Source: Octopus bimaculoides
Taxonomy: Eukaryota
Assembly (NCBI RefSeq): GCF_001194135.2
Contig: NC_068994.1
Coordinates: 43,586,768 to 43,650,767 of the forward strand
DNA: 64,000 nt
Direction: 5' to 3'
Below the pieces are notes generated by a model, which worked only from the letters and a program-made list of their open reading frames with translations, had not been told where the DNA came from and did not search any database. The translations under genes were made by a program, and so were the position numbers. Below, in pieces: positions 19,340 through 51,411 of this stretch (its first letter is position 1; each line of letters starts with the position of its first letter).

Positions 19340-19414
19340 CATTAAGTTATGGGGACATAAACACAACAGCATCGGTTGTCAAGCAATGTTGGGGGAACAA
19401 ACACAGACACACAA

Positions 19415-19465
<51 letters not shown>

Positions 19466-30892: not shown

Positions 30893-31191
30893 TTATTCAA
30901 CTTTATACAAATGTTTGATACAATAAATAAGGGCAGCAAATTTATCATTATTCCTGAAGTGAGATCTCCACGTAAATTCTGTTAAATAAGAGTTAAATAA
31001 GGCTTTATTATTACTTGAATGTTTACGTTGCAATTGTTTCTTAACTCTTGGCCACATCCTGTCGATATTTTTAGTGTGGATTTCTGGATCGTTTGGATTT
31101 TCATAGTCTATATATTCATGAGTGTATATGCCATGTTCAATCTGGTCAATTTGAAGATATTCAGCCCATATATCTGATACAATATGAGTGC
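30893..31191 (-). CDS. Gene A exon 2: C-terminal half of a Merlin/IS1595 (ISXO2-like) transposase-derived protein (329 aa in total)
   Basis: Acceptor tcattgtAG. Phase-1 exon translates (G)THIVSDIWAEYLQIDQIEHGIYTHEYIDYENPNDPEIHTKNIDRMWPRVKKQLQRKHSSNNKALFNSYLTEFTWRSHFRNNDKFAALIYCIKHLYKVE*. Carries the family SDxWxxY, HTxxI(E)xxW and YLxEFxWR motifs and is conserved in genes B and C. Confidence 0.92.
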
Positions 31192-31683
31192 CTACAATGA
31201 AAATAATGACATTTTATACAGAAATGAAAACTCACATCTACGGAATAATAGATGAAATGAAAATAGTTACAACGGAAAAGCAAAAGCAAATCATACACCA
31301 CGAATATATTGCTGTATCTTAGTGACAACACCTGTTATTAAAACATTAATCATCGCCTATAGAAGCAGTAGCTCATCTTGAAAGAAGGCATCTCTAAGTG
31401 TCGAGTATAGTGTCAACAAGCATATGCAAGTATTACATCATTTTATACAGTTGCTTCACTTTTGGGAGTAAAAATTGGTCAGCATAGTTGTTGTTGAGAA
31501 AGTTTGCAACATACGCAACAGGTAATGTCAGTTATCATTTTTTAAAGGGGATTTTCAAATTTGTCTTTCACTATTCATTTTTTACTGACAAACTTTACTT
31601 CCTCCAAAACAATTGTCAACACCATCTAAGAAATATATTTCTATCTTTGTTTGCTACACTATGACAGAAAACACAGATATCTA

Positions 31684-32109
31684 CCGTAAATACTCGAGTA
31701 TAATCCGCACTTTTTTCTCAAAATTTAATGGTCAAAATTTCTAGTGTGTACTATACACGAGGTTAAAAATGAAAAATATTTTCTAAGCAAAATTTTCTAA
31801 ATGATAAAATATGTAAAGGCAATTTACTTAATATTTATTTTTCACTAACGTTATTCCTGTTATTTCTTTATTTTCTGCAAACAAAGTGCACAAAAAAGCT
31901 ACACGTTTGCATTATGTTATATAAACAATAATAATAAAGAACGTTACTGTATATACGTTTACAAACTAAGGACGTTATATAGACCTCCTTGACTCAAGTT
32001 AGAGAAGGGGTGCGTATTATACACAAGGTTTAGGTTTTTCAGAGGTACAGCCCCCTAAAAATCCCCTGCATATTATACTCAAGGGCGGACTATACTCGAG
32101 GATTTACGG
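31684..32109. mobile_element. Tc2/pogo-like MITE, 426 bp, TA TSD
   Basis: TIRs CCGTAAATACTCGAGTATAATCCGC and CCGTAAATCCTCGAGTATAGTCCGC (2 mismatches in 25), TA on both sides. Absent from the paralogous introns. Confidence 0.9.
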
Positions 32110-32432
32110 TATTTATTTTCCTTCTTCTCGGTTTGTTGATTCAACATTACAATTTTACAATCCTGCTAAGAATGTTAGAGTTAGATACTTAGATACTTAA
32201 ATGAAGATTAATACCTAATGAAATATACTGCCTTTTCTTATGTTCTATTGTTTAGTGGGTCGAGTGAACGATCACTTTTATATAATGTTAAGCTTAATAC
32301 TTACCCCTTGCAATAGATCCTAATGAGACAACTAGTTCTAGAGCCACAGTTAAGATAATCCATTTACAAGCTGGGCCAAGCTGATAAGAAAATAACCTGT
32401 TTGTGTTGGTGCCATTACACAGAATGACTAAC

Positions 32433-32624
32433 TTTGGCATGGTGTACAAAACATGCTGCCTGGTTTAAACCATTTTCGAAACTTTGGATACCTTTTAAAA
32501 AATTGGCTTTGTTACCAGCAATCCTTTCTCTTATTGCCCTATCAGTCAGTATATATTCCAACATTCTGTTCATAGCTTGTAGATCTCTCCAACTAGCATG
32601 GGATTTGGAGGCAACCCAGTGAAA
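32433..32624 (-). other. Candidate coding exon of an unidentified gene (192 nt, phase 0-0) inside the gene A intron
   Basis: ttctgtAG ... AAA|GTTAGT. Open frame FHWVASKSHASWRDLQAMNRMLEYILTDRAIRERIAGNKANFLKGIQSFENGLNQAACFVHHAK looks protein-like, but I do not recognise it. Confidence 0.35.
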
Positions 32625-33129
32625 CTACAGAAGTAATTACTAAAGCATGTCAGAATTTGAAAAGCAATATCTGGTTTCTTTCTCCATTTCACTCAACAAG
32701 TTTTTCTTTTAAACATTATAAAACATGCAAGAATCTATCAGTTCGATAAAGTTGCATCAACTTTCTCTCCATTACTAAATACTAACATAATAATTTAAAT
32801 AAAGTGAATAGTTAAAACTAATGTTCTTTTGCTCACAGACTTTCACAACTTCGAGGAAAAGTTTTACTTCATTCCCATAGCAAAGGTCCTGTAGATTTAA
32901 TTTATATACATTGCCCTACTTCAAACTGCAATTTAAAGTGAGACAACTTTGTAGTAGTGAATATATTTGATCAATATAAATATGTAGCTGCATGTATGTT
33001 TGTTTGTGAAGGGACATTGTTATAAGTGCTTGGTTCATAATAATAAGACTGCAGGTTCAAATCCTGGAGCAGGCATCGCATTGTGTCCTCAAACATTACC
33101 CACTGTTTCAGTCTTTTCTTTTCGTCACC

Positions 33130-33419
33130 CTTTCAAAGCCTAGCCAGGCTCATGGGTCCGGTTTCCCGGTTTCAATGGCGTATGTGTTCCCCCCCCCCCA
33201 GCTAGACGGGACGCCAGTCCATCACAGCGTTACTCAAGAAACAGGAAGAAAGAGTGAGAGAGAGTTGGGGCGAAAGAGTACAACAGGGGTTGCCACGACA
33301 CCCCAGCCGGAGCCTCATGGAGCTTTTTAGGTGTTTTTGCTCAACAAACACACATGACGCCCGGTCTGGGAATCGAAACCGCAAGTCCGCTGCCCTAACC
33401 ACTGGGCCATTGCGCCTCC
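33130..33419 (-). mobile_element. tRNA-derived SINE (GGAGGCGCAATGG head)
   Basis: Same head as 38168-38550, with a different 3' body. Confidence 0.85.
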
Positions 33420-34191
33420 ACATTGTTTCAGTTTACTTAACTGTAAATGAGTACCAGCCCCATGGTGGTGCAGCTCTGTCTCCCACTACCATCACATCCA
33501 GGGCTGCCACAGTGTCAAAAGTGAGAGGGCCAAAAAAGTCTATGTCCACTTGCAACTACATGAATTCCTAAAAGCAAAAGCTTGATACATGTTACCAGGC
33601 CATATTCACTCACAAGTGACAGTTGACTCTGCAATTTCGAAGTATGGGGACTTACATGCTGGACTTAAAGTTTCTGTGTAAACAATAGAATAGTTGCACT
33701 TCTTCAGCTACTGTAAGTCTGATGCCCGCCTCTTTCTCTCTTATCTTTATTGTAGCTATTCCACAGCTTGGATTTGCAACAATGTCACATTAATCAATCA
33801 TTTTTTCAGCATCTGAGTGGTTTGTGATATTGCTTGCAACAATAATTTCTGCTGTTGAATGAAATTTGTTGAGATCCTCTCAAAAATTGTGATAAATGGT
33901 TTGTAAAATAATACTAATGATCTTTCGATAAGTATTTTAAGTGGCCAACAAAAGTTTAAGTTGGCTTCCTGTCAACAAACAATATATTTGACATTTAGTT
34001 CTTCAATTATATACTACCACTAAACTATGAAATCAGTACTTTCAATTTCAAGACTTAGGCTCATAAATTTTAAGATGAATGAATCACTAAATTTGTGCGA
34101 AAAATAAGGTAATGTGTATATAGTTTATGACACACATATATCTATGTGAATGTGTGTGTACTGATACATATACAATCTTTTCTAATGTGAA

Positions 34192-34420
34192 GGTGGTGAG
34201 CTGGCAGAAACGTTAGCACACCAGGCTGAATGCTTAGCGGTATTTCATCTGTCTTTATGTTCTGAGTTCAAATTCCACTGAGGGCGACTTCACCGTTCAT
34301 CCTATTGGGGGGGGGGGTCAATAAATTAAGTACCAGTTGCGTACTGGGACCGATGTAATAGACACGCCCCCTCCCCCAAAATTTCGGGCCGCGTGCCTAG
34401 AGTAGAAAAGAATATTTTCA
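34192..34420 (+). mobile_element. tRNA-derived SINE (GGTGGTGAGCTGGCAGAA family)
   Basis: Similar to 19037-19270. Confidence 0.85.
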
Positions 34421-35326
34421 AATGTGATCTCATTTGAAATAGCTAATTTGTATTATAACCGTAGTCTTTGAAAGATATCAAAATATTTGTAACACTGATT
34501 TAGTGCTTTCAGAAAATGATTCACAATTACCATTTTCTTCTCTATATGATAATTTATGTACTTATACCGAAAGATGACCACATTATGTTTCAATAATTTT
34601 CTAATTAAAAATCTCTTTTCGTTATTCTTTTACCTCGAAATGTATATTCGATAGTTTGGACGGCGATCTCACAGTATAATTTACAGTTTTTATTTTCTAA
34701 AACATAGGCCTTCTTTTCTAGAAAAAGTCATAAAAAGATATGCATTACAAAGAAAGTTAAGAGGACCTAAACTCAGAGGCGGAGCATCAAACTGTAGTTA
34801 TGTCTAATATCGTTTTGATTACTGTTCGACAATTTCTGGTATATGTGCAATTTATGTCTCACGAATCTAGTAGTCCTACTGTAAGTAAAGATAGTGACAG
34901 AAGCCAGCAAAAATGAAAACTACTAAAGTACTGATAAAAAATCAGGAAGGAATAAAAATTGAAGTGGTACGTTATACGCCAAGATCGCCATTTTGATTTG
35001 TATCCGTGTTGACTTAATTGTTGAAATGTCAATTTGGTAAATTTTACTCAGTGTTGTGGAGCGTCTATCAACTGAAACTAAGTGTGTTTTTACTTTGAAA
35101 TTTGAAGTTAAAACTCTGTTGATGATGTTATTCCACAAGTGCTTGTTGTTTCATATAGATACAAGGCCGTTATTATTCATTGACAGAGCGGCGAAAACAA
35201 AACAAAACAAAACAAAAACGATAGGGAGTAACGTAGGAAGGGAACTGGCGAAACGGTATTTTAAGCATAAACTAAGATCTGAAGACAATGTAGATCAAAG
35301 AAAACCATAGATATTATTAATCATAC

Positions 35327-36017
35327 CTGGTAAAATCCATCGGATAATTGCAGCTTCGAAAGCTTCTTTATTTTCATGTTCAATAGGTACAAGGAAACAT
35401 TTGTCAGTGCCACGTTCGATTCCACCGAAAACACAAAATCCTTTTATATGTTTTTCATTAGGCTTAGATCTCGAAAATGTAGTTACATCTATTTCAACGA
35501 CTTTTGGTTCACCTGTCTGCAAATCGAAGCCGCCAATTTCAGGTGGGTCATCTAATTCTTTGGGATGGTCTTCTAGAAACCGTTCTAGTAGTTCTCGGAT
35601 GAGCCGGAACAGATCAATAGTTGACTTCGGACAGACGTTTGTTTCATGGGTCATTTCGGTATGTAGATAATCTCTTGACCACATATACATAAGCCATATG
35701 AATGTTGTCAGCGAGAGATGACTATTCTCAAAAAAAGACCCCTTCCGGATCGATCGAACGAAGTTATGTTTTCGACATCTCCATCGTTTTCCATCGATAC
35801 CTTTCTTGTAGCCGACGATTGTACATGGTTTGTCACAAATGAGACACTTAAAGGAATTGCTTATGAGCTTATATTTCGCCAACCATGAAATTGCTATATC
35901 ATTCGTGGAAGTCTGTTGAAAGAGATCAGAAAATGTCCAAGACTCTTGCCTAATTTTTTCGTCATCAACGATGTCAGTGCATAACAGTTTATAGCTTAGT
36001 CGTTTACCGCGTGACAT
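35327..36017 (-). CDS. Gene A exon 1: zinc ribbon, helical region and first DDE strands of a Merlin/IS1595-derived protein
   Basis: ATG at 36017, 691 nt, ends ...WILPG at the donor CCAG|GTATGA. Motifs CxxC...DGKRWRCRKH, SIRKGSFFE, IGG...VVEID and VFGGIERGT are typical of eukaryotic Merlin/ISXO2 transposases. Confidence 0.95.
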
Positions 36018-36063
36018 CCTATTTTACAAGTGAAATAACAAAAATATTACAAATACAAGCATA

Positions 36064-36102
36064 ATACGAAACTATGGCTTAAAGAAAATATCAGTTTCGT
36101 AT
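36064..36102. promoter_or_regulatory. Conserved inverted repeat ATACGAAACT-N19-AGTTTCGTAT upstream of gene A
   Basis: Perfect 10-bp arms. The same motif is found upstream of B and C. Function inferred. Confidence 0.55.
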
Positions 36103-36530
36103 GAATTAATTTTCATTATCACAAGTCATTCAATGCGACAACAAAACAAAAAAAGTTTTCATTCATTCTAAGTTTGAAATCTGATTAGATATTCTTTCAC
36201 AATCTAGACTGAAAATAGTTCATATTAACTTCTTCAGAAATACAGAACTTAAGTAATTTTCTTGAAACTTTCTTAATTCATTTTCTCTTTTTGTATGAAA
36301 GTATCTATCTTTCGTCGTAATTTAAGTATTTTTAATTCAAAGGTTTACTCTGGCAAATTAAAATGAAAATTGATATTTTAATGTGTATCCTTAATCAGCA
36401 CATCATAATCATCACCATTTTAACGTCTGCTTTTCAATATTTGCATAGGTCACTCAGGGTTTACTGAGGCAGATTTTCTATAACTAGATGCGGCGGACGT
36501 CGGACTTAGGAAGCACCAAGTTGAAATTTC

Positions 36531-37505
36531 GGTCAATATAAAGATCTCCACCCGGGAACAAAAAAAATTAAAAAATAATAATAATAAACCAGCCTAGTGA
36601 GTGTTAACAAGTATGTAGAAAACGAATATGAAAAAAAAAATGCGCGCCGCTGACGACCGTGGGGAGGTGACTTTCGGAAAATTCGCAAGATCCCTTTTTT
36701 CCGTCATAACTTTAGGTAAAATGGATATATATTNNNNNNNNNNNNNNNNNNNNNNNNNNNNNNNNNNNNNNNNNNNNNNNNNNNNNNNNNNNNNNNNNNN
36801 NNNNNNNNNNNNNNNNNNNNNNNNNNNNNNNNNNNNNNNNNNNNNNNNNNNNNNNNNNNNNNNNNNNNNNNNNNNNNNNNNNNNNNNNNNNNNNNNNNNN
36901 NNNNNNNNNNNNNNNNNNNNNNNNNNNNNNNNNNNNNNNNNNNNNNNNNNNNNNNNNNNNNNNNNNNNNNNNNNNNNNNNNNNNNNNNNNNNNNNNNNNN
37001 NNNNNNNNNNNNNNNNNNNNNNNNNNNNNNNNNNNNNNNNNNNNNNNNNNNNNNNNNNNNNNNNNNNNNNNNNNNNNNNNNNNNNNNNNNNNNNNNNNNN
37101 NNNNNNNNNNNNNNNNNNNNNNNNNNNNNNNNNNNNNNNNNNNNNNNNNNNNNNNNNNNNNNNNNNNNNNNNNNNNNNNNNNNNNNNNNNNNNNNNNNNN
37201 NNNNNNNNNNNNNNNNNNNNNNNNNNNNNNNNNNNNNNNNNNNNNNNNNNNNNNNNNNNCCATAACCAAAAACGTAGGATTCCGTAAATAAAATCAATTT
37301 ATATCCATTTTACCGGAAGTTATGACGGAAAAATGGGATCTTGTGAATTTTCCGAAAGTCCCCTCTCCACCCCCAGGGTCTACAGCGCGCATTTTTTTTT
37401 TTTTTTCATATTCGTTTTCTACATACCTGTTAACACCTATCAGGCTGGTTTATTATTATCATTTTTTATTTTTTTTGTTCTCGGGTGAATATCTTTATAT
37501 TGACC
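36531..37505. mobile_element. Long-TIR (~200 bp) fold-back DNA element with GG...CC termini, flanked by GAAATTTC on both sides; centre in a gap
   Basis: ggtcaatataaag...ttatgacggaaa arms are reverse complements on either side of gap 36734-37259. Confidence 0.8.
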
Positions 37506-38167
37506 GAAATTTCTCAAATTTCTCCGTTTTGACGGAGATTTTTCCATGTTTGCCTAGGTCACTCAGGGTTTATTGAAGCAGATTTTCTATAATCAGATGC
37601 AGCGGACGTAGGACTTAGGGAGCACCAACAAGTTGAAATTTCTCCGTTTTAACGGGGATTTTTCAGATTTTTTTCCTGATGCCCATGGAAATGCTCTAGA
37701 CTATGTTTTTAGCAAAAAAAATAAATTTGCGAAAAAGGATGTCGTTTTGTTTTATACCCGTACCCATTGACCGATTTTGGTCGATGATTTTTGGCAGGTA
37801 CTTCACACTTTAAAACTATAGAAGCCTTTTCGGTAAAAAAAAAAAAAAGATTATAGGAGTGAGATTATAGAATACGGTAGATAGAAGAGATGGTTGGAAG
37901 ATATGAAGGTTTGGAATAAATAGACAGCAGTGGTAAGTTATATTATCCCACTATTTTAGAGAGTATTTTAACAAGGTGGTACAGGTATTGCATTTCACCT
38001 GTTGACATGGTCCTCTGTCATCTACTACGGCTGTAGCATCTTAAGATTGTTCTTCATCTCATTCCAGGCCATTTTTTGGTTTTTTCCTCACACAGGTACT
38101 ATTTCTTTTGAGTAGTCAGCTCATACTCATGTAGATATCACTCTTTCTAGCATGCTACATCTGATAC

Positions 38168-38550
38168 GGAGGCGCAATGGCCCATTGGTTATGGCAGCGG
38201 ACTCGCAGTCATAAGATCGCGGTTTCGATTCCCAGGCTGGGCGTTGTGAGTGTTTATTGAGCGAAAACACCTAAAGCTCCACGGGGCTCCGGAAGGGGAT
38301 GGTGGCGAACCCTGCTGTACTCTTCCACCACAACTTTCTCTCACTCTTACTTCCTGTTTCTGTTGTGCCTATATTTCAAAGGGTCAGCCTTGTCACACTG
38401 TGTCACGCTGAATATTCCCGAGAACTACGTTAAGGGTACATGTGTCTGTGGAATGCTCAGCCACTTGCACGTTAATTTCACAAGCAGGCTGTTCCGTTAA
38501 TCGGATCAACTGGAACCCTCGGCGTCGTAAGCGACGGAGTGCCAACAACA
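38168..38550 (+). mobile_element. Full-length tRNA-derived SINE (GGAGGCGCAATGG family)
   Basis: A-box and B-box-like head (tggcccattggtt; ggtttcgattccc), (CAA) tail. Confidence 0.9.
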
Positions 38551-39619
38551 TCTGATACAGATATATGCACACACACACACACACGTGTGTACTGATTGTG
38601 ACTTCTCTAGCTTTTCATAGTCTGTTTCTATCATTTGACCCTGTCAAACCTACATACATTCACTATAGAAACAACAATTACAGCCACTACAAGAATTTTG
38701 AAATTTCATTTCATTGGTCAATTTTGTTTAACATTTTAATTTTCATTAGAAGATGAAATAATCTGACATAGTCAGTTCAATGCTTTCCATTAGTGAAAAT
38801 TAGCCAATCAGTTTCACTCCTCAAAATCTAAGCAAACTCTCATTGGGAAGTCTATCACTTGCTGTTTAAAACACCTAACCCACAAATTTAATCAGTGAGA
38901 TACTAGTGGCCTTAGAAGCTAGGAAACCAGCCTATATTATTTTACTATTCACAAACACTCCCACAATCATTGCCATGATTGTTGCACAAACTTTCTATTT
39001 CTTGCTCACTTTATTCTCAGTGAAATTACACAATAAAAATTCACACACATATTCTCATTTGAAAAATACTCAGTAACTTTCACAAGTAGATAGACAGTGT
39101 TATTTTCCTTTCTTTTCACCTCATACAACACTTTATCAATTTTCTATTACATCAAGGTAAAACGAAGAGCTGTATGTCTTGAAACTTCCCGATCCACTTT
39201 TACCGTTGGTTCTTGGGCAGAATCAGCAGTTTCCATAAATTCAACATTGCATCTATCCAGGTTATCATGAATTTGTGAAATGTATGCTTCGCATTTAGTT
39301 CCTCTGATAGAATAAAAATTTGTTGGGATTCAAATAGCTGTATAACTGGTTTTCTCAAAGTACATCTAATCAAAATATTTTGAAAAATAAAATCCTATCA
39401 GATAAGTTTGTGCTCTGTCACCAGTCATTTATTCTTTGATGAAAATGAACCTTCATGTGAAAATTGTAAAAGTGAATGATCAACCAACCTGTTAAAGAGG
39501 GTAGTAAAGCATCCTCCAACTCACAACCTAAAATCTTACAGAAAAAGGACAGCTTGAGCAATGTGGTCTTGGTGCACTGTCTTGGAAAAAGTGAGAAGCT
39601 ATGTAGCCACTTGACCCCA

Positions 39620-39790
39620 TAGAGATACCTTACGTAAACCCATTTTTACCCCTGGGAAGAAGTGATTCACATCAGTGTGACCTCTATCCTTTGCACTGTC
39701 CAGCATGGGTGGTCCTACTTGTGATCTGCCAGTATAGCTCTGAGGGTCACTGATGGACACAAGCTACCACATTTCTACAAGGGCTAGACC
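39620..39790 (-). mobile_element. RTE-clade LINE 5'-region fragment (probable)
   Basis: Related to 10013-10120. Confidence 0.45.
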
Positions 39791-41073
39791 CTGAGGTAAA
39801 TTAGTCTGCTGTAGATTTGGAATAAATCCCTCAAAAATACAGAATGATCATGACTGGAATGCCTTTGATCATGTTTGTATGATGAAGACAGACATGGAAT
39901 TAAACTTTCTTTAATCTTTATGAAATGAAATATATTTATAAATTCCTTACAACAGCATATAGAGAAGATATGACAATGCTTTTGATGGATTGACAATTTC
40001 CCTAAAGAGATTACTGAGGGAAGTTTCATGTTGTAATAATGAACAGACATGGTCAGTAATTTATTCAGTTCAAATATTTTCTTCACCAGACCACGTATCT
40101 CACCAGTTAGAAGAATACTGCTCTTGAATCTGCTTGTTTCTAGCTGTTTAGAGTGGCCTCTGTTCAAGAATTTGCCTTATTCACCACAGTAGGCCAGCAA
40201 GTTAGCAAGGATGTTATATTAGGTAAAAGGCATTTTGGCACAGCTGTTTTGGCATCACCGATTCATTTCCCAACAGACGTTTTAATGTTTCATTTCCTTT
40301 CTCTTTGTGAGCATCAAATTATGAATGTGTAATGTCTTTCTCTCTCACTCTATCGGTAAGTGCATATTTCTACATGTGTGCATGTTTTTCCCCAACAAGT
40401 GAAATGTCCAGTCAGCCATGCCAATCATCAGCATCTAGTCTCATTCCAATTTTAGGCACCCAGGCAGAATTTGATTCAGAACACAGCCAGCTGGAACAAA
40501 TACCATAAAGCACCCAATCTGTCAATCCAACAACCTGGATTGACACTTCTTTCTTTTATCAATGTTGAAAGATAAAGCTGACCCTGCTGGGATTTGATCT
40601 CAGAACTCAAAGAATCACAACATATACTGCAAGACAGTTTGTCAGATATTCTAATGACCCTGCCTATGTCTAGATTTTTTACATTCAATATTTGGAATTT
40701 GCTTTTGAAATGAAAAGAAAACAATTCTCAACCAAAACAGCAAACAAATGTTACAAACCCTGCCCAAGATGGAGCAACTCCTGCCTCAAAGACAGCACTA
40801 CTTCTTCCTTATTTTGTCCGCCTTTATAATGTCTATCTTTAACATAATTCACAACAAATTATGTTCAGATTTAAGATACTTAAGCAATTTTATCTTGTAC
40901 TTGTTTCAGTCATGCTGGAGCACGACCTTGAAAGGTTTTAGTCAAATAGATCACCACCTATACTTATCTTATTGGTCTCTTTTGCCAAACTGCTGACTTA
41001 CAGGGATGTAAACAAACCAACACCAATTGTTAACCAGTGGAAAGGGGCCAACCATAGATATATATATATATTC

Positions 41074-41260
41074 GAAACGCTGGAGTTAAAACAGGGGTAG
41101 CTGATGAAGGAAAATGTTCTCTATGTGGCTTGTGTGTTTTCTGTACTCTGGTTATTATTATTCTCTTGTCTACGTTTTGTTTGCAATGTCCTGTACCCAG
41201 ATATGCACCTATATATACAGGTAGACGTAGGTATGCACATACCTGTACGTATATATGCAT
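41074..41260 (+). mobile_element. Interspersed repeat (Penelope-like-end candidate), copy 3, 5'-truncated
   Basis: Homologous to 8807-9080. Confidence 0.55.
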
Positions 41261-41581
41261 ATACTCATTTATTATTTGTTATATATATATATAGATATAT
41301 ATATATATATATATATATATGGGGAGCTATCATATAGTTTTCATCAACCACATTCATTAATAAAGCATTTGTAAGCCTGGAGCTATGGTAGATGAGACTT
41401 ACGCAAAGTGCCACACAGTGGGATTGAACCAAAAGCCATGTGGTTGCAATGTAACCTTCATAACCACACAGCTATGGCTGTGCCTGTAATTATTTTGGTC
41501 AATTTTTCTTAAGCACATGTTTAACAAAAATTATGATGTGAAAATTGCACAATTGGCTACAAAAATATAAAAGCAAATATA

Positions 41582-41877
41582 TTAGACTTTATACAAATGT
41601 TTGATACAGTAAATTAGGGCAGCGAATTTATCATTATTCTTAAAGTGAGATCTCCACATAAATTCTGTTAAATGAGAATAAAATAAAGCTTTGTTATTAA
41701 TTGAATGTCTTCGTCGCAGCTGTTGCCTGAATCTGAGCCACATTTTGTTGATATTTTGAATGTGGATTTCTGGATCATTTGGGTTTTCATAGTCTATATA
41801 TTCATGAGTATATATGCCTTGTTCAAACTGTTCAATTTGAAGATATTCAGCCCATATATCTGATACGATATGAGTGC
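41582..41877 (-). CDS. Gene B exon 2 (Merlin/IS1595-derived protein, 328 aa in total)
   Basis: Acceptor ttcattacAG. Translates (G)THIVSDIWAEYLQIEQFEQGIYTHEYIDYENPNDPEIHIQNINKMWLRFRQQLRRRHSINNKALFYSHLTEFMWRSHFKNNDKFAALIYCIKHLYKV*. Confidence 0.92.
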
Positions 41878-43112: not shown

Positions 43113-43405
43113 CATTGGTTCTTTACCATCTTTTACTTATGGAGCCCTGTGATTACTATTTTACTCTGGGAGACCCCCAATAGCCATTCAATGTTTAAAA
43201 ACTAGTTTTATAGATTCTGCTTTCAAAATTCCTATTTTGCTTTTCCCCCAAAAAAAGTTTTTGCTGTTTCTTGCAATAAATGCATCTAAAACAAAATTTT
43301 TTTCATGGATCCTTAATATACTACACTGGGTTCCCATTTTACTATTTTGCTTGCATGGACCCCCAAAAATCTTATATGGCCCTCCAGAGCTTATATGGAC
43401 CACAG
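43113..43405. mobile_element. hAT (Charlie-like) MITE with 8-bp TSD CTCTAGAG
   Basis: CTCTAGAG at 43105-43112 and 43406-43413. Degenerate termini CATTGGTTC / CTGTGGTCC. NTCTAGAN is the known Charlie-type target preference. Confidence 0.7.
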
Positions 43406-44516: not shown

Positions 44517-45207
44517 CTGGTAAAATCCATCGGATAATTGCAGCTTCGAATGCGTCTTTATTTTCATGCTCAAGGGGTACAAGGAAACATTTGTCAGTGC
44601 CACGTTCAATTCCACCAAAAACACGAAATCCTTTCAAATGCCTTTTATTAGATTTAGATCTGGAAAATGTAGTTATATCTATTTCAACGACTTTTGGTTC
44701 ACCTGTCTGTAAATCTAAGCCGCCTATTTCAGGTGAGTCATTTAATTCAGTGGGGTGGTCTTCCAGAAATCGTTCTAGTAGTTCCCGGATGAGCCTAAAC
44801 AGGTCAATACTTGATGTTGTACAGATATCTGTTTCAAAGGTGATTTCATTATGTAGATAATTTCTTGACCACATATACATAAACCATAGAAACGTTGTCA
44901 ACGAGAGATGACTATTTTCAAAAAACGATCCTTTGCGTACCGATCGAACGAAGTTATGCTTTCGACAGCTCCATCGTTTTCCATCGCCACCACTGTTGCG
45001 AGTGACAAATGAACAAGGGTTACTACAAGTGGGACACAGAAAAGAATTGCTTATAAGCTTGTATTTCGCTAACCACATCATTGCTGTATCTTTCGTGGAA
45101 GTCTGTTGAAAAAGATCAGAAAATGTCCAAGTCTCTTGCGTAATTTCTTCATCCTCAATGATATCTGTACTTATCATTTTCCGGCTAGGTTGTTTAGCGC
45201 GAGACAT
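44517..45207 (-). CDS. Gene B exon 1 (Merlin/IS1595-derived protein)
   Basis: ATG at 45207 (MSRAKQ...), 691 nt, the same length as in A and C. Donor CCAG|GTATGA. Confidence 0.95.
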
Positions 45208-45252
45208 TATGATACAAACCAAACAACGAAAAGAATAAGGAAATTTCACTAC

Positions 45253-45292
45253 ATGCGAAATCAAATGCTTAAAGGGAATGTCAGTTTCGTAT
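45253..45292. promoter_or_regulatory. Conserved inverted repeat upstream of gene B (ATGCGAAATC-N20-AGTTTCGTAT; one arm degenerate)
   Basis: Positional and sequence match to the A and C motifs. Confidence 0.45.
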
Positions 45293-45863
45293 CAACTATT
45301 TTGTATGACAAATGAGTTAATTGCTCTCAGACACACAAAATAATTAATATAAAATTCTTCTTTAGAAATATAGGACTTAATTCTAAAAGTAACTTACTTA
45401 AAGCATTGCCTTTTCGTTATAGAAAGGAAAGAAGCAGTTTAATCTTTTTTTTTTCTGTTTTTAATGCTGGTAAACTTAGATTTTTAAATGACAGCCTCGG
45501 TGTGAAATGTAAACAAATATGTTGCATTTCAGATCCGAAATAGGTGGAGTCTTGATTAAAGCACAACGTTGTTGCTTCACTTTTGTCAATAATTTTCTCG
45601 CATTTTTTATATGGTGCTCTATCGCCTCGCCGAATTATGTTTTCAGTATGAAAAATCATGCAAAAAAAAACAAAAAAAAAATTCACAATATTTTGGTGAA
45701 TTTTTCAGCGGAAATTTTTAATAAATGATTGCAAACCTCATGGGGGAAGATAACTGACAAGTAATGTATCTTTCTTTTATTTATTTTCTTTTTGGCAAGA
45801 CTTCCTTTTGTACCCCACCCTCAAAACATCCCTTTATTATTATTTTTTTTTTTTCTTCTACAT

Positions 45864-46266
45864 AAACCCCCGTTTTCGGCTACGGAGAATACGAATCTGC
45901 AAAAGAAATGGGCAAAAATCGGCATTTTGAAATTACCCCCACCCCAATTTCTTCATTTTTAACTTTTTTCAGGAATTTTTTTCTTTATTTATTTATTTAT
46001 TTTTTCAAAATATGCGGAAAATTACGGAGATTATGGTTCTGAAAAGCATTTCCAAAAATTTTTGTAAAATTTTTTTTCAGAATTTTGTTTTTTCAANNNN
46101 NNNNNNNNNNNNNNNNNNNNNNNNNNNNNNNNNNNNNNNNNNNNNNNNNNNNNNNNNNNNNNNNNNNNNNNNNNNNNNNNNNNNNNNNNNNNNNNNNNNN
46201 NNNNNNNNNNNNNNNNNNNNNNNNNNNNNNNNNNNNNAATCTCCGTATCCGAAAACGGGGGGTTTT
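45864..46266. mobile_element. Inverted-repeat (MITE-like) element spanning a gap
   Basis: aaacccccgttttcggctacggaga and tctccgtatccgaaaacggggggttt are reverse complements. Confidence 0.6.
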
Positions 46267-47679
46267 TTGGAGAATAAAAAAATGGGGAGAAAATGGGGAG
46301 AGACGCGAGAAGTCTTTCCTTCTTTTTTACCCACACAGCGGAAATTACACCACCCAACAAAATTTCAACTTTCTACATTTTTCGTGCTCTCGTTTTTTTT
46401 TCTCCTTCAAGAAACAGTGATAACTCTTCCAGAACTACCGCATCCAAAACATCTGGTACTACCTAAATACAGGTGTTACGTGCACAACATTTTAAATATA
46501 CGTTATGTGGACGTGTAATGACACCCTAACCCTAAAACTACCCCCCCCCCTTCATATCGTTACGTAGATTCAGCAGTACCTCTGTATTTAAGTAGTGCCA
46601 AATATCCTCCTTTTACATTTTTCAAATTGTTTTCCGGCTTGTTTATTTATTCATTTTTGTATGTTTGAAAAGGTGGGGAGTATGATTCGAAAAACAAAGT
46701 TGGTGATCTTTCGCACCTAAGAAAGCACTTTCAGAAATTGCAAAAGTTATGAATGATTCAAGGTCTCTGCGAAACAGGAGATAAACTACAGCAACTCCTT
46801 TCATTTTGTGTATGTGTGTGCATGGTACCAATTGTAAAAGCTTCTTTGTGACTGAGTATACAAATTATAAAAGTATCTTGTATGTGTGTGTGTCAGCATG
46901 CATGCTCAGTGTCTTTCCTGGCTTCTTAAGTATGACTATATGATTTCAAGACTCTATTTACAGTACTATTCCACCACATTTTCAGCTTGGGTTGGACTGG
47001 AACCTTGCACCACCCACAGGCTTCGTCTGTAGCCTGCAACAGATTGTTATCTAATAACTTCCAGATTTTTTGTGCTGAAAGTCTCTACCTTGTCTTCCTT
47101 TCTGACATAAGCATCAGCTAGAATCTTTCAGAATCTAGCTGGAGGCTCTTTTATCTTCCATGTCATCTTTCTCCAAATTGTACCCTGTCTCTGAGTCTAT
47201 CAAACTCATACTCTAAAGTAACTAATCACTACTCTATGCCAGTGCTTTCTTCACTAGGGAAACACTTAGCCTTTACAAGCATCTACCTGTCTTGTTTGCC
47301 TAACATTTAGATGATAAGGTGGCTGGTCAACTTCTTGAATTTCTGTTGTAAATGGTTGTGTCATTTGCACCATATAACTTGACTTTTGATCACAAAACTA
47401 TAAGCCATCATAATATTGTTTCATTATTTTAAATATTTTTTATATAATAAGCTAGACAACAATTGAGGTTATTGAAAAATTCATATTTAGGTAACTTATA
47501 TTGTTAGAAACAATGCCAAATATTTAGCATAACTCAGCAGATGTAAATTTCAGGGTATTCCATTATTCAGGTGAGAACACCTCTGTACACAATGTGTTTT
47601 GTAACATGACTTAACAGTTGGACAAAAATTATGAGAGAAAAAGAACTAAATTAAGTACAAAAATATAAAATCAAATTTA

Positions 47680-47975
47680 TTAGACTTTATACAAATGTTT
47701 GATACAATAAATGAGAGCAGCAAATTTATCATTATTCTTAAAATGAGATCTCCACATAAATTCTGTTAAATATGAGTGAAATAAAGCTTTATTATTTATC
47801 GAATGTTTACGTTGCAATTGTTGTTTAACTCTCTGCCACATCCCGTCAATAGTTTTGGTGTGGATTTCTGGATCATTTGGGTTTTCATAGTCTATATATT
47901 CATGAGTGTATATGCCTTGTTCGATCTGGTCAATTTGAAGATATTCAGCCCATATATCTGATATAATATGAGTGC
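47680..47975 (-). CDS. Gene C exon 2 (Merlin/IS1595-derived protein, 328 aa in total)
   Basis: Acceptor cttcattacAG. Translates (G)THIISDIWAEYLQIDQIEQGIYTHEYIDYENPNDPEIHTKTIDGMWQRVKQQLQRKHSINNKALFHSYLTEFMWRSHFKNNDKFAALIYCIKHLYKV*. Confidence 0.92.
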
Positions 47976-48149
47976 CTGTAATGAAGATAACATTTTATAC
48001 AGAAATGAAGATGTATTTGTAGAACTAAAATGAGGTGTTTCATTAATACATTTTCCAAAGGACAAAATGAACAAAAAGTTCTAATCAACAAGCAAAACCA
48101 AATGACAGTCTTTGCTCCCCAAAATTATATTGCTGTATCTTAATGACTG

Positions 48150-48312
48150 AGTGGCTATGTGGTAAGTAGCTTGCTTACCAACCACATGGTTCCGGGTTCA
48201 GTTCCACTGTGTGGCACCTTGGGCAAATGTCTTCTACTATAGCCTTGGGCCGACCAAAGCCTTGTGAGTGGATTTGGTAGACGGAAACTGAAAGAAGCCT
48301 GTCGTATATATG

Positions 48313-48345
<33 letters not shown>

Positions 48346-48540
48346 TTGTGTTTGTCCTCCTAGCATTGCTTGACAACCGATGCTGGTGTGTTTATGTCCC
48401 CGTCACTTAGCGGTTCGGCAAAAAGAAACCGATAGAATAAGTACTAGGCTTACAAAGAATAAGTCCTGGGGTCGATTTGCTCGACTAAAGGCGGTGTTCC
48501 AGCATGGCCGCAGTCAACTGACTGAAACAAGTAAAAGAGT
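48150..48540 (+). mobile_element. Near full-length tRNA-derived SINE (TGGCTATGTGGTAAG family) in the gene C intron
   Basis: Multi-copy in this window. Confidence 0.9.
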
Positions 48541-50113
48541 AATCTATTATTATTGTCCGTCAGACACAATTTCTCTTACCCCCAATCACTCTGTTTTCAT
48601 TATACTCTCGCTCCATTCCCCCACTCATTCTAGTTCTGTCATTGCTTTGTTTTTTTACTTCAACCACATCAGCTCACATGAACATATGTCTAAGAGTAGT
48701 GAGGACTCTTTTTTTTTTTCTCACACTGTACCAGGCAACTCCACTCATGCTGGTGCTACAACAAAATGCACACCCAGTATATTCCAAAATGTGGTTGGTG
48801 AACAAGCAGAGAAAATATAGATTCAGGGGGATACTTTAGTCTTATATTGTCTAGGACATTATAAGACTAAGGGGTGCTCTGATAAAAATGCACCCAGTAC
48901 ACTAAAGTTGTTTGTGGTAGGAAGGGAGCACATTCAGCTGTAGAAAGAAACCAAGCCAAAAATGTATCATACATGGTAACTCCAACCAAGCTATGAGGGC
49001 AGTAATTTCCAATAATAAAAAAAAACTGACTACGATCATGACAACTTCTCCAACCCATATCAGCATGTAAAGTGAACATAAATGATGATGATCATGCGTA
49101 TGAAGATGATAATAAGCAACAATCCATCTTGAAGAAAACACAACTAAGCAGAGGATGAATACATTGTGAACATAATAAAACAATTTTTTTTAAAGAGAAT
49201 GACACCATAAATGCTCTATAAGTGTAAGTGAATGTACCAATATATTTTACAGACAAAATTCACTTACCTCTTCAGAACACAAGTCAACATCAGAGCAGTG
49301 TACATAAATAAATGTTTTCTTATTTCTTCTTCAAAGTTGATTCTGCATTAGGATTTTAAAATCTCGTTAGGTGTGTTAGAGTTACTTCCTCTTCGGTACT
49401 CAACTACCTTATAAATGAAATTTGGTGTATTACTCATATTGCTGAAGCGTCTAATTAACTCTCAAGTGTTTTCAGTTGAAATTAGAAGTGTGTGTTTTTA
49501 AGTAGATATTTATATTAACATCCTGTCTATGACATGTTTACACATGTATTTGTTGTTTCATTGCAATAGATATAACATACGAACAAATTCACTCGTGATT
49601 TCTATCCTAACTATATCAATAAATTACGCGCTTCTTTAGAAGCACACCTCTCCGAGTAAATGACACCTAATTTCTAATAAAAAAGTTATGGAAATGGGAA
49701 ATATATTCAATCGCAGACGATATTGTCTGGCTCATTGTATCATCAATATCTGACTGGTAAAACTAAGTTCAAACATGTTTGTTTATATTCGCGAGTAACC
49801 GTTTTCCGTATTTTATTTTTTAGTATAAAATATTTAAAAAATAGATGAGTCTTCCTAATTTTTTGCATGCTTCATTTATTTTGGATATATTTCCCATTTT
49901 CGTTACTTTTCTTTAACAAGTAAGCGTCATTTTCTTGGAGAGGTGCGCTTTTAAAGAAGCCCCATAAATTATTAGTGCGATAGGAAAAAAAGAAAAAACA
50001 AATTAGCCAAGGATTGTGACCTTTGAATATAAGGCTCTGCTATCCTCGCAAATTTTATTTTTATTGTAGTTGTTCATTGATACAAGGCTGTAAATATTAT
50101 TAAACTATTCATT

Positions 50114-50325
50114 AAGGTGGCGAGCCGGAAGAATCGTTAGCACGCCGGGCGAAATGCTTAGCGGTATTTCGCCTGCCGCTACGTTCTGAGTTCTAATTCC
50201 ACCGAGGTCGATTTTGCCGTTCATCCTTTCAAGGTCGATAACATAAGTACCACCTGAACACTGGATCAATGTAATCGACTCGTCCCACCTCCCCCAAGCT
50301 GCCCTTGTGGCAAAAATTTGAAATA
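50114..50325 (+). mobile_element. SINE with 18-bp TSD ATTATTAAACTATTCATT
   Basis: TSD at 50096-50113 and 50326-50343. Confidence 0.9.
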
Positions 50326-50647
50326 ATTATTAAACTATTCATTTTAAGTGTTGTTAAATATCAACCGTTGTTTAGTCCTAGGTCGCTGGCCGTCAAAAGA
50401 AATTGTAGAAGCAGCGGTTTGACAAGAGCTCCCTTTATCCAAGAATCGCCAACAGGAGGAACGAAAGAAAAGTAAAGGCAAAGCTGAATTTTAGAAATAG
50501 TATATCGAAACGAAGACCGCACAAACCAAAGGAAGGCGAAGGTAAAAAATACGCACACCCGGTGGTTAAGGATAGGGTTACGCCGAAAATGGGCGGTGTG
50601 CGTATTCTTAACCTGCGCTTCAAAGGAAACTGTTGATTTTATCATAC

Positions 50648-51338
50648 CTGGTAAAATCCATCGGATAATTGCAGCTTCGAAAGCTTCTTTATTTTCATGC
50701 TCAATAGGTACCAAGAAACATCTGTCAGTGCCACGTTCAATTCCACCAAAAACACAGAATCCTTTCAAATGTTTCTTGTTCGGTTTACATCTGCGAAATG
50801 TGGTTACATCAATTTCAACAACTCTTGGTTCACCTGTCTGTAAATCGAAGCCGCCAATTTCAGGTGGGTCATCTAATTCTGTGGGATGGTCTTCCAGAAA
50901 CCGCTCTAGTAGTTCTCGGATGAGCCGAAATAGATCAATAGTTGACTTTGTACAAACATTCGTCTCATGAGTAATTTCATTATGTAGATAATCTCTTGAC
51001 CACATATACATAAGCCATAAGAATGTTGCCAGCGAGAGATGACTATTCTCAAAAAAAGACCCTTTGCGGATCGATCGGACGAAGTTATGTTTTCGACATC
51101 TCCATCGTTTTCCATCGATAATATCTTTCTGGTTTACAAATGTACATGGGCTGTTACAAATGAGACACATAAAAGAATTGCTTATGAGCTTATATTTTGC
51201 TAACCATGTAACTACTATATCATTTGTGGAAGTTTGTTGAAAAAGATCAGAAAATGTCCAAGACTCTTGCCTAATGTTTTCGTCGTCAACGATGTCAGTA
51301 CATATCATTTTTCGACTTCGTCGTTTACCGCGTGACAT
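50648..51338 (-). CDS. Gene C exon 1 (Merlin/IS1595-derived protein)
   Basis: ATG at 51338 (MSRGKR...), 691 nt. Donor CCAG|GTATGA. Confidence 0.95.
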
Positions 51339-51367: not shown

Positions 51368-51411
51368 TTATACGAAACTAATTCTATGAAGAAATTAATA
51401 GTTTCGTATAA
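51368..51411. promoter_or_regulatory. Conserved inverted repeat TTATACGAAACTA-N18-TAGTTTCGTATAA upstream of gene C
   Basis: Perfect 13-bp arms. Confidence 0.55.

What the first reader, a model, noticed from the sequence alone, without database searches (positions are those of the whole stretch)
30893..51338. Tandem cluster of three intact, spliced Merlin/IS1595 transposase-derived genes: a probable domesticated gene family
Seen: three same-strand paralogs, each with a 691-nt exon 1 and a 296-299-nt exon 2. None has a frameshift or premature stop. A and C are about 88% identical and B and C about 79% in exon 1 (manual counts). Their introns and flanks have diverged and carry different SINE/MITE insertions. 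I see no TIR or TSD bracketing any copy. Established: Merlin elements are eukaryotic IS1595/ISXO2-type DDE transposons with TIRs and 8-9-bp TSDs, and transposases are repeatedly co-opted as host genes. Inference: an immobile, host-recruited transposase amplified by local duplication and kept by selection, possibly a cephalopod-specific DNA-binding or genome-regulation system. I cannot tell whether it has been described.
Basis: partly seen in the sequence, partly recalled or inferred. Interest (0 to 1): 0.9.

Follow-up and report, generated by a model that had tools for sequence, protein, structure and literature searches.

The report
Domesticated Merlin transposase genes in octopus
Three neighbouring octopus genes descend from a Merlin "jumping gene" enzyme but no longer jump: they sit at the same chromosomal place in three Octopus species and are kept intact by selection, so the host uses them for a job that is still unknown.

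Summary
The window is Octopus bimaculoides chromosome CM046614.1. The three minus-strand two-exon genes are identical to RefSeq LOC106868238, LOC106868237 and LOC106868236, all named "uncharacterized protein". Both flagged assembly gaps are intergenic.

All three spliced proteins pass Pfam's threshold for the ISXO2/IS1595 (Merlin) transposase domain. The cluster C-B-A is collinear, introns included, in O. sinensis and O. vulgaris, with one-to-one orthologs. Ortholog dN/dS is 0.04-0.15, and dN is 0.18-0.54 of the local non-coding divergence. A fourth copy in those two species has decayed, which shows what neutral evolution does here.

Relatives at about 40% identity are intronless Merlin elements. 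One has GG-terminal inverted repeats, an 8-bp target duplication and a D-D-E triad. The octopus genes have none of these: the catalytic Glu is Asp, Asn or Ser, the residue after the first Asp is no longer Glu, and 4 residues are deleted from the core.

So this is a domesticated, tandemly duplicated, Merlin-derived gene family, seen so far only in Octopus. It is catalogued in databases but I found no description of it as domesticated. Its function is unknown. It is a new member of a known kind, of moderate interest.

The parts
35327..36017 (-). Gene A (LOC106868238), exon 1, 691 nt from the ATG. It encodes the basic N-terminus, the CxxC..CxxH zinc-ribbon-like motif, the helical region, and the first part of the RNase H-like core including D177.
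   Evidence: protein identical to XP_014768891.1
31192..35326 (-). Gene A intron, 4135 nt, GT..AG, phase 1, no N. Collinear with the longer O. sinensis intron and carries SINE-like insertions.
30893..31191 (-). Gene A exon 2, 299 nt including the stop. It encodes D237, D274 and the strongly conserved C-terminal helices. An AATAAA signal overlaps the stop codon.
44517..45207 (-). Gene B (LOC106868237), exon 1, 691 nt.
   Evidence: identical to XP_014768889.1
41878..44516 (-). Gene B intron, 2639 nt, GT..AG, phase 1, no N.
41582..41877 (-). Gene B exon 2, 296 nt. The third catalytic position is Asn (HIQNINKMW).
50648..51338 (-). Gene C (LOC106868236), exon 1, 691 nt.
   Evidence: identical to XP_014768888.1
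47976..50647 (-). Gene C intron, 2672 nt, GT..AG, phase 1, no N.
47680..47975 (-). Gene C exon 2, 296 nt. The third catalytic position is Asp (HTKTIDGMW).
36064..36102 (-). Conserved promoter-proximal palindrome ATACGAAACT-N19-AGTTTCGTAT, 47-85 nt upstream of A's ATG.
   Evidence: also present in the O. sinensis and O. vulgaris A orthologs
45253..45292 (-). The same element upstream of B. The second half-site is degenerate (GATTTCGCAT).
51370..51409 (-). The same palindrome upstream of C (N20 spacer, both half-sites perfect).
51439..51485 (.). Upstream arm of the 47-nt inverted repeat that brackets gene C only.
   Evidence: orthologous arm at L002 9854-9900
46553..46599 (.). Downstream arm of the same inverted repeat, 1.08 kb beyond C's stop codon.
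   Evidence: orthologous arm at L002 16135-16181
36734..37259 (.). Assembly gap, intergenic, upstream of A. The adjoining segment 36206-36667 is inverted relative to O. sinensis and O. vulgaris.
46097..46237 (.). Assembly gap, intergenic, between C and B. The flanks are collinear with continuous O. sinensis and O. vulgaris sequence.

Best explanation
A, B and C are host genes descended from one Merlin (IS1595-like) transposase gene that had already acquired a phase-1 intron.

Shown here:
- The ancestral gene was triplicated in tandem before O. bimaculoides split from the O. vulgaris/O. sinensis lineage.
- The copies have stayed at the same chromosomal place.
- Each copy has been kept intact by purifying selection.
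- The hallmarks of a mobile Merlin are absent.

Inferred from motifs and an AlphaFold model:
- Each protein keeps the full transposase architecture: a basic N-terminal tail (possible nuclear localisation signal), a CxxC..CxxH zinc-ribbon-like element, a helical DNA-binding-type region, and an RNase H-like core.
- The active site is remodelled. The triad is D177-D237-D274 in A and C, and D-D-N in B.
- The Glu that follows the first Asp in every transposon relative is replaced.
- A 4-residue deletion lies in the core and a 6-7-residue acidic insertion lies before it.

My commitment on mechanism, all inferred:
- These are nuclear DNA-binding factors that act as homo- or hetero-oligomers.
- They no longer move their own gene.
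- They use the transposase fold for DNA recognition and assembly, possibly with residual nuclease chemistry in the D-D-D members.
- One candidate target is their own conserved upstream palindrome.

I put about 0.85 on domestication and about 0.4 on this specific mode of action.
For: Homology: PF12762 scores 48.9, 31.8 and 50.4 bits against a threshold of 27. The match spans the exon junction, and exon 1 alone gives no hit.

Fold: the AlphaFold2 model has mean pLDDT 78. Foldseek's top hits are retroviral integrase cores, and the ISCth4 transposase also appears, at rank 41.

Fixed locus: window 53400->28700 is collinear with O. sinensis L002+L001 and O. vulgaris L003. This includes introns and intergenic DNA.

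Orthology: a neighbour-joining tree gives A, B and C clades with 96-100% bootstrap support and a monophyletic Octopus family at 85%.

Selection:
- Ortholog dN/dS is 0.05 (A), 0.04 (B) and 0.12-0.15 (C). Fisher p values run from 1e-16 to 4e-37.
- Against unique non-coding DNA (p = 0.085 over 5,877 sites), pN is 0.22, 0.18 and 0.54 of neutral, with p <= 8e-5.
- Both halves of the protein are constrained, with dN/dS 0.07 and 0.09.

Neutral comparator: a fourth copy between B and A in O. vulgaris and O. sinensis is riddled with stops, frameshifts and an insertion.

Transposon contrast:
- Relative P0017 (40% identity) sits in a 1905-bp intronless element with 29-nt GG.. inverted repeats and a perfect 8-bp target duplication, TTTCAGTG.
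- Position 274 is Glu in 11 of 11 transposon-like relatives and Asp, Asn or Ser in 13 of 13 Octopus proteins.
- Position 178 is Glu in 11 of 11 relatives and Val, Ile or Met in Octopus.

One ancestor: the intron position and phase are the same in the second cluster on another chromosome.

Low copy number: only about 10 clusters at 60% identity or more, all from Octopus or one unnamed sample.
Against: - No transcript or protein evidence could be examined. The gene models are RefSeq/Gnomon predictions.
- I could not search whole octopus genomes, so unannotated dispersed copies are excluded only indirectly.
- The acidic triad survives as D-D-D in A and C. IS1595-family elements naturally vary at the third residue (my own knowledge of the family; not checked here). 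Catalytic competence is therefore not excluded.
- Gene C has a 47-nt inverted repeat around it.
- Synonymous rates here are abnormal, about 3 times the non-coding rate, so classical dN/dS overstates the constraint. The comparison with non-coding DNA still shows constraint.
- O. bimaculoides has many other Merlin-domain proteins: 191 in PMC8101967.
Confidence: 0.85

Rival explanations
1. A domesticated recombinase or nuclease system. The D-D-D paralogs (A, C and most second-cluster members) would still cut DNA. The paralogs lacking one carboxylate would be non-catalytic partners: B (N/S at the third position), LOC106879048 (first Asp is Gly) and O. sinensis LOC115214311 (second Asp is Gly). This would resemble PiggyMac with its PiggyMac-like partners, or RAG1.
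For: The RNase H-like half is as constrained as the DNA-binding half (dN/dS 0.09 against 0.07). It is the best-conserved part of the family. Ten of 13 family members keep three acidic residues. The family is a mix of triad-complete and triad-incomplete paralogs kept side by side.
Against: The Glu is replaced in every member. The DE motif is lost and a 4-residue deletion sits in the catalytic core. No target sites are known, and no programmed DNA rearrangement is known in cephalopods (my own knowledge). I have no biochemical data.
Confidence: 0.1
2. An immobilised but still functional transposase source. The copies cannot move themselves but mobilise non-autonomous Merlin elements elsewhere in the genome. 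Selection would then be element-level rather than host-level.
For: Octopus genomes contain Merlin elements, including recently active ones in O. vulgaris (PMC13282606). O. bimaculoides has 191 Merlin-domain proteins (PMC8101967). The acidic triad is retained as D-D-D.
Against: Three separate fixed copies are each conserved one-to-one across species at dN/dS 0.04-0.15. Element-level selection does not preserve particular immobile copies. The catalytic motifs are systematically altered relative to all 11 transposon relatives. No matching inverted repeats were seen in the window.
Confidence: 0.04
3. Ordinary Merlin transposon copies, recent or decaying, that merely look intact, or open reading frames preserved by gene conversion without selection.
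For: The family belongs to a superfamily that is abundant in this genome. Gene conversion between B and C is visible in O. sinensis and O. vulgaris.
Against: Orthologous positions in three species and introns too diverged to align between paralogs. Non-synonymous divergence is far below the non-coding rate. No TIR/TSD are present. An adjacent unconstrained copy has decayed. Conversion alone cannot lower dN relative to dS.
Confidence: 0.01

Closest known systems
Merlin superfamily DNA transposons / bacterial IS1595 (ISXO2, IS1016) transposases
   Same: [quoted passage not shown] Protein length is about 320-330 aa. A CxxC..CxxC/H element precedes a helical region and an RNase H-like core. Identity to a bona fide Merlin element found here (L006) is 37-45%.
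   Different: No 5'-GG terminal inverted repeats and no 8-9-bp target duplications. An intron is present. The loci are fixed and orthologous. The triad is D-D-D or D-D-N instead of D-D-E, and the DE motif is lost. A 4-residue deletion and a 6-7-residue insertion are present. The NCBIfam IS1595 score (51-59 bits) is below the cut-off of 75.
Merlin-related conserved ORFs without TIR/TSD in Stentor, Symbiodinium and Perkinsela, proposed as domesticated (PMC8101967)
   Same: Intact Merlin-derived ORFs with no transposon ends. Some were amplified by segmental duplication, some are syntenic between species, and the DDE motif is often altered.
   Different: Those are protists, with no dN/dS analysis. 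That paper listed the three octopus proteins only in its bulk sequence appendix and did not discuss them.
C. elegans MAB-31, a nuclear factor of the Sma/Mab TGF-beta pathway (PMC2921377)
   Same: This is a lead only. NCBI names Hydra homologs of this family (39% identical to A) "male abnormal protein mab-31". That implies MAB-31 resembles Merlin transposases. MAB-31 is a constitutively nuclear protein with a developmental role.
   Different: I could not compare the MAB-31 sequence itself. The 2010 paper reports no homology outside nematodes. If the link is real, it is an independent domestication.
Multi-paralog domesticated transposases: PiggyMac and PiggyMac-like proteins of Paramecium, vertebrate PGBD1-5, insect PIF/Harbinger-derived DPLG genes (PMC9710019)
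   Same: Whole-transposase domestication followed by duplication into paralogs. Some of those paralogs keep the acidic triad and some lose it. All show purifying selection at fixed loci.
   Different: They come from different superfamilies (piggyBac, PIF/Harbinger). Their functions are at least partly known, whereas none is known here.

Membership tests
Merlin / IS1595 transposase (protein homology) | DDE_Tnp_IS1595 (PF12762) domain above Pfam's gathering score | tested here: met
   48.9, 31.8 and 50.4 bits against 27 for A, B and C
Merlin / IS1595 transposase (protein homology) | NCBIfam NF033547 IS1595-family transposase above its curated cut-off | tested here: not met
   58.6, 51.4 and 58.9 bits against a cut-off of 75, with full-length alignment
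Merlin / IS1595 transposase (protein homology) | N-terminal zinc ribbon (PF12760) | tested here: not met
   No hit at E <= 10 for A's N-terminal part. The best among relatives is 12.6 bits against a threshold of 25.4. A CxxC..CxxH pattern and a three-stranded sheet in the model suggest a zinc ribbon of some kind.
Active Merlin transposon | Catalytic D-D-E triad in the conserved motifs (EIDE.., SDGW, N[VI]E..W) | tested here: not met
   Both Asp residues are kept in A, B and C. The third residue is Asp (A, C) or Asn (B), against Glu in 11 of 11 transposon relatives. The Glu after the first Asp is Val or Ile.
Active Merlin transposon | Terminal inverted repeats with 5'-GG ends | tested here: not met
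   None around A or B. C has a 47-nt inverted repeat that starts CATATCG. Positive control: L006 has GGTTATCTCC.. repeats.
Active Merlin transposon | 8-9-bp target-site duplication | tested here: not met
   The flanks of C's inverted repeat do not match (..CCCCCCTT | .. | TTTTTACAG). The control element has a perfect TTTCAGTG duplication.
Active Merlin transposon | Multiple dispersed, similar copies | tested here: inconclusive
   Only about 10 protein clusters at 60% identity or more exist in the protein collection, all in two tandem clusters per genome. The genomes themselves could not be searched.
Domesticated transposase gene | Orthologous copies at the syntenic position in several species | tested here: met
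   Collinear C-B-A cluster in O. bimaculoides, O. sinensis and O. vulgaris. One-to-one clades have 96-100% bootstrap support.
Domesticated transposase gene | Purifying selection on the fixed copies | tested here: met
   Ortholog dN/dS 0.04-0.15. pN is 0.18-0.54 of local non-coding divergence.
Domesticated transposase gene | Transcription and correct splicing | not testable with these tools
   Only indirect support. My models equal the RefSeq models, the splice sites are canonical and conserved, and Pfam is hit only after splicing.
Domesticated transposase gene | A demonstrated host function | not testable with these tools
   No literature was found on these loci.

The most novel reading that the evidence does not exclude
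The Octopus lineage has built, from one Merlin transposase, a small set of triad-complete (D-D-D) and triad-incomplete paralogs. These would work together as a host DNA-cleaving or DNA-rearranging machine, comparable to PiggyMac with its partners or to RAG. This would be the first such system derived from the Merlin/IS1595 superfamily, and it would be in an animal with an unusually reorganised genome.
Probability: 0.08. Interest if true: 0.85.

Novelty: new member of a known kind. Interest (0 to 1): 0.5.

Why it matters
Domestication of transposases is a well-known route to new host genes. In what I could search, however, Merlin has no characterised domesticated gene in animals. The only hints are suggestions in protists and an unverified link to C. 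elegans MAB-31.

This locus gives a clean, testable case:
- three one-to-one orthologs and a second cluster;
- strong constraint on the whole protein;
- a remodelled active site;
- a decayed sister copy as an internal neutral control;
- a conserved upstream palindrome as a candidate binding site.

The family appears to be lineage-restricted in a group whose genome biology attracts attention for transposon expansions and RNA editing. Knock-outs and binding assays in Octopus are becoming feasible.

Tried and rejected
- Pfam on exon 1 alone: no hit. The domain is recognised only after splicing.
- PF12760 zinc ribbon: not detected in these proteins or in their relatives.
- Extending the 47-nt inverted repeat outwards: the outer flanks score no better than shuffles (33 against 27 +/- 5). 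The ends are therefore sharp, but without a target duplication.
- An apparent tblastn extension of B's exon 2 into the intron (aa 207-231) was judged spurious: the extension adds only about 4-5 identities over 22 residues.
- Resolving the N gaps with the chromosome-level O. bimaculoides assembly: it has identical sequence and the same gaps.
- Look-up of P0002's contig: not on record. This was solved through cluster members.
- Sensitive tblastn for a fourth copy in window 37260-41581: nothing.
- Sequence search of the PDB: no relative with a solved structure.
- Rfam and tRNA scans of the window: nothing.
- Paper searches for the LOC identifiers, for "ISXO2-like transposase" with Octopus, for the sample accessions, and for mab-31 with transposase: nothing relevant.
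- Gene conversion among A, B and C as the cause of the high synonymous divergence: rejected, because the O. sinensis paralogs are more diverged from each other, not less.
- RNA editing as that cause: rejected. Editing hard-wired into the genome should give A>G on the coding strand only (established knowledge of A-to-I editing), but T>C is as common or commoner.

Full report
**1. What is in the sequence**

A self-comparison of the region shows three blocks of homology on the minus strand, each in two pieces. Reading the junctions gives three genes with the same structure. Each has a 691-nt first exon starting at an ATG, a phase-1 GT..AG intron, and a second exon of 299, 296 and 296 nt ending in a stop codon.

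| Gene | Exon 1 | Intron (nt) | Exon 2 | Protein (aa) |
|---|---|---|---|---|
| A | 36017..35327 | 4135 | 31191..30893 | 329 |
| B | 45207..44517 | 2639 | 41877..41582 | 328 |
| C | 51338..50648 | 2672 | 47975..47680 | 328 |

There is no internal stop or frameshift. tblastn finds no further copy in the 64-kb window.

Homology between the copies covers the exons, about 100 nt upstream of the ATG and about 65 nt beyond the stop. The introns share only dispersed repeats.

**2. The assembly gaps**

No exon or intron contains N. Gap 36734-37259 lies 717 nt upstream of A's ATG. Gap 46097-46237 lies between C's stop and B's ATG.

The window is the reverse complement of O. bimaculoides GCA_001194135.2, chromosome CM046614.1, at about 43.62-43.64 Mb. 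Locus L008 matches it with zero mismatches and has the same gaps, so that assembly cannot resolve them.

The gap-free O. sinensis and O. vulgaris assemblies are collinear across the second gap. Its 141 N correspond to 116 nt at L002 16479-16594. Next to the first gap, segment 36206-36667 is inverted relative to both other species. That region is therefore either rearranged or misassembled. It lies outside the genes.

**3. Identity of the genes**

The three spliced proteins are identical to RefSeq and UniProt entries, all uncharacterised:

| Gene | RefSeq protein | Locus | UniProt |
|---|---|---|---|
| A | XP_014768891.1 | LOC106868238 | A0A0L8HW81 |
| B | XP_014768889.1 | LOC106868237 | A0A0L8HXC6 |
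| C | XP_014768888.1 | LOC106868236 | A0A0L8HW78 |

UniProt calls them "ISXO2-like transposase domain-containing protein".

All three hit PF12762 (DDE_Tnp_IS1595) above Pfam's threshold, and the match runs across the exon junction. Exon 1 alone hits nothing. That independently supports the splice.

The NCBIfam IS1595 model aligns end to end but scores below its cut-off. PF12760 (zinc ribbon) is not hit.

An AlphaFold2 model built from a 16-sequence alignment has mean pLDDT 78. It shows N-terminal helices, a small three-stranded sheet carrying C58/C61/C81/H84, a helical region, and an alpha/beta core. Foldseek's best PDB matches for that model are retroviral integrase catalytic cores, and the ISCth4 transposase also appears at rank 41. 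No sequence relative has a solved structure.

**4. Host gene or transposon?**

*(a) Fixed orthologous locus.* O. sinensis (L002+L001) and O. vulgaris (L003) carry the same cluster in the same order, C-B-A. They are collinear with window 53400->28700 through introns and intergenic DNA, at 75-96% identity in unique blocks. A neighbour-joining tree recovers one-to-one A, B and C clades (96-100% bootstrap) and a monophyletic Octopus family (85%). The triplication therefore predates the species split.

*(b) Selection.*
- Among the three paralogs, dN/dS is 0.18-0.30.
- Between orthologs it is 0.05 (A), 0.04 (B) and 0.12-0.15 (C), with Fisher p values from 1e-16 to 4e-37.
- Synonymous rates here are abnormal (see section 8), so I also compared non-synonymous divergence with 5,877 aligned unique non-coding sites (p = 0.085). 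The ratios are 0.22, 0.18 and 0.54, all with p <= 8e-5.
- Both the DNA-binding half and the RNase H-like half are constrained, with dN/dS 0.07 and 0.09.
- C's higher value is partly explained by a B-to-C gene-conversion tract at the end of exon 1 in the O. sinensis/O. vulgaris lineage.

*(c) Internal neutral control.* Between B and A, O. vulgaris (L003 17884-18385) and O. sinensis (L001 1844-1963) hold a fourth copy. It has stop codons, frameshifts and an insertion. The O. bimaculoides window has lost it altogether.

*(d) Transposon hallmarks.*
- Inverted-repeat searches find nothing bracketing A or B.
- C is bracketed by a 47-nt inverted repeat, 46553-46599 and 51439-51485, with 41 of 47 positions complementary. 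The ends are sharp, starting CATATCG. There is no target duplication and no 5'-GG.
- The same arms sit at the orthologous places in the other two species and drift independently. This is an old relic, not a sign of recent mobility.
- Positive control: relative P0017 (40% identity) lies in a 1905-bp intronless element with 29-nt GGTTATCTCC.. repeats and a perfect 8-bp duplication, TTTCAGTG. These are the hallmarks given for Merlin in PMC8101967.
- The contig of the nearest transposon-like relative, P0011, is bounded by 35-nt inverted repeats.

*(e) Copy number.* In a collection of 5.8 billion protein clusters, only about 10 are at least 60% identical to C. Nine come from the three Octopus species and one from an unnamed sample. 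They fall in two tandem clusters per genome. The second O. bimaculoides cluster is on chromosome CM046607.1, next to a DHHC gene. It has the same phase-1 intron at the same codon, so the whole family descends from one intron-bearing ancestor.

**5. Active-site changes**

I aligned 13 Octopus proteins with 11 transposon-like relatives.

| Position (A numbering) | Transposon-like relatives | Octopus proteins |
|---|---|---|
| 274, third catalytic residue | Glu in 11 of 11 | Asp, Asn or Ser in 13 of 13 |
| 178, after the first Asp | Glu in 11 of 11 | Val, Ile or Met |
| 238, after the second Asp | Gly, Asp or Ser | Ile or Val |
| After 258 | about four residues present | deleted |
| Before EIGG | none | acidic insertion EL(G)DDPP |

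Two second-cluster members have lost the first or the second Asp. Conversely, residues 136-165 and the C-terminal 30 residues are much better conserved within Octopus (0.92) than among the transposon relatives (0.45-0.67).

The enzyme has been reshaped, not merely preserved. However, D-D-D could still bind metal, so loss of catalysis is not proven.

**6. Best explanation**

This is a domesticated, tandemly duplicated, Merlin-derived gene family.

Shown: homology, gene structure, orthology, constraint, absence of Merlin ends, and an altered triad.

Inferred: nuclear DNA-binding proteins that use the transposase fold for DNA recognition and oligomerisation and do not mobilise themselves. A catalytic (nuclease or recombinase) role for the D-D-D members, with the incomplete-triad paralogs as partners, is the most interesting reading left open. 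I give it about 0.1.

**7. What is known**

- A survey of Merlin (PMC8101967) counted 191 Merlin-domain proteins in O. bimaculoides. It lists these three in its sequence appendix but does not discuss them. It proposes domestication only for protist cases.
- A survey of transposon-derived transcription factors that included Octopus does not mention Merlin.
- No paper in the library mentions the LOC identifiers.
- NCBI's name "mab-31" for Hydra homologs points to C. elegans MAB-31, a nuclear developmental factor (PMC2921377), as a possible independent Merlin domestication. I could not test this.
- No close relative appears in annotated proteins of Argonauta (only a 37%-identical transposon type), squids, cuttlefish or Nautilus. 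On present data the range is the genus Octopus, not cephalopods in general.

**8. Side observations**

*Synonymous divergence.* Four-fold degenerate sites differ by 24-29% between O. bimaculoides and O. sinensis, against 8.5% in the surrounding non-coding DNA. In A and B the changes are mostly AT-to-GC on the O. sinensis/O. vulgaris branch. GC3 rises from 0.31-0.33 to 0.43-0.45. Non-coding changes are symmetric. I have no explanation.

*Upstream palindrome.* ATACGAAACT-N19/20-AGTTTCGTAT sits 47-85 nt upstream of the ATG of A and C. It is degenerate upstream of B and of a second-cluster gene, and is kept in the orthologs. The 10-mers occur nowhere else in the window. It is the best-conserved part of the upstream region and a candidate regulatory or autoregulatory site.

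*RefSeq models in O. sinensis.* RefSeq merges A and B into one gene there. One predicted isoform joins B's exon 1 to A's exon 2.

**9. Verdict**

The genes are annotated but, as far as I could find, not described as domesticated. This is a new member of a known kind, of moderate interest.

Noticed in passing
window exons of A and B (35327-36017, 30893-31191, 44517-45207, 41582-41877) against L001/L002: Synonymous sites diverge about 3 times faster than the adjacent introns and intergenic DNA. Four-fold p is 0.24-0.29, against 0.085 over 5,877 non-coding sites. The changes are directional: most are T>C and A>G on the O. sinensis/O. vulgaris branch, and GC3 rises from 0.31-0.33 to 0.43-0.45. Gene C is balanced, and non-coding changes are AT/GC-symmetric. 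The cause is unknown.
   Followed up: partly
window 46553-46599 and 51439-51485: A 47-nt inverted repeat (41/47 complementary) brackets gene C only, 4.9 kb apart. The ends are sharp (CATATCG..), with no target duplication. It is conserved at the orthologous positions in O. sinensis and O. vulgaris. Part of the arm (CTGTATTTAAGTAGTGCC) recurs nearby, for example at 46451-46472. It is probably a relic of an unidentified element.
   Followed up: partly
window 36064-36102, 45253-45292, 51370-51409; L007 9931-9967: A palindrome ATACGAAACT-N19/20-AGTTTCGTAT lies at a fixed distance (47-85 nt) upstream of the ATG of each paralog. It is kept in the orthologs and is degenerate in the second cluster. 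The half-sites occur nowhere else in the 64-kb window.
   Followed up: partly
L003 17884-18385 (O. vulgaris); L001 1844-1963 (O. sinensis): A decayed fourth copy of exon 1 lies between B and A in the two other species, with stops, frameshifts and an insertion. No trace of it remains in the O. bimaculoides window (37260-41581).
   Followed up: yes
window 36206-36667, next to gap 36734-37259: This roughly 460-nt segment just upstream of A's proximal promoter is in the opposite orientation relative to both O. sinensis and O. vulgaris. Parts of it are duplicated on the far side of the gap (for example 36431-36500 against 37540-37609). It is either a real small inversion or a local misassembly.
   Followed up: partly
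O. sinensis LOC115219239 / LOC115218985 (P0001, P0002, P0038, P0044): RefSeq merges the A and B orthologs into one gene. One predicted isoform (X2) joins B's exon 1 to A's exon 2. Separately, the C ortholog carries a tract of about 90 residues at the end of exon 1 that is identical to B, which indicates B-to-C gene conversion.
   Followed up: partly
L007 (O. bimaculoides chr CM046607.1, 56.31-56.34 Mb): A second tandem cluster of the same family lies on another chromosome, next to a DHHC palmitoyltransferase gene. Two members lie in L007 (a 327-aa protein and LOC106879049); LOC106879048 is on the same chromosome with the adjacent LOC number. The intron position and phase are identical. One member has lost the first catalytic Asp.
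   Followed up: partly
L006 5580-7484 (ENA ERZ24894579 contig ctg23959l): A textbook Merlin element: 1905 bp, 29-nt GG.. terminal inverted repeats (97% complementary), a perfect 8-bp target duplication TTTCAGTG, and an intronless 322-aa D-D-E transposase. The host organism is unknown.
   Followed up: yes
window 48149-48542, 61170-61525, 26122-26506, 51710-52002, 19343-19640, 52650-52869 and others; also 19036-19236, 58800-59000, 34190-34363, 50114-50280, 13023-13179: Two short dispersed repeat families, about 390 nt and about 200 nt, each have many copies in the window and in the O. sinensis and O. vulgaris loci. These are the different insertions that fill the introns. ARAGORN finds no tRNA-like part and Rfam gives no hit.
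   Followed up: partly
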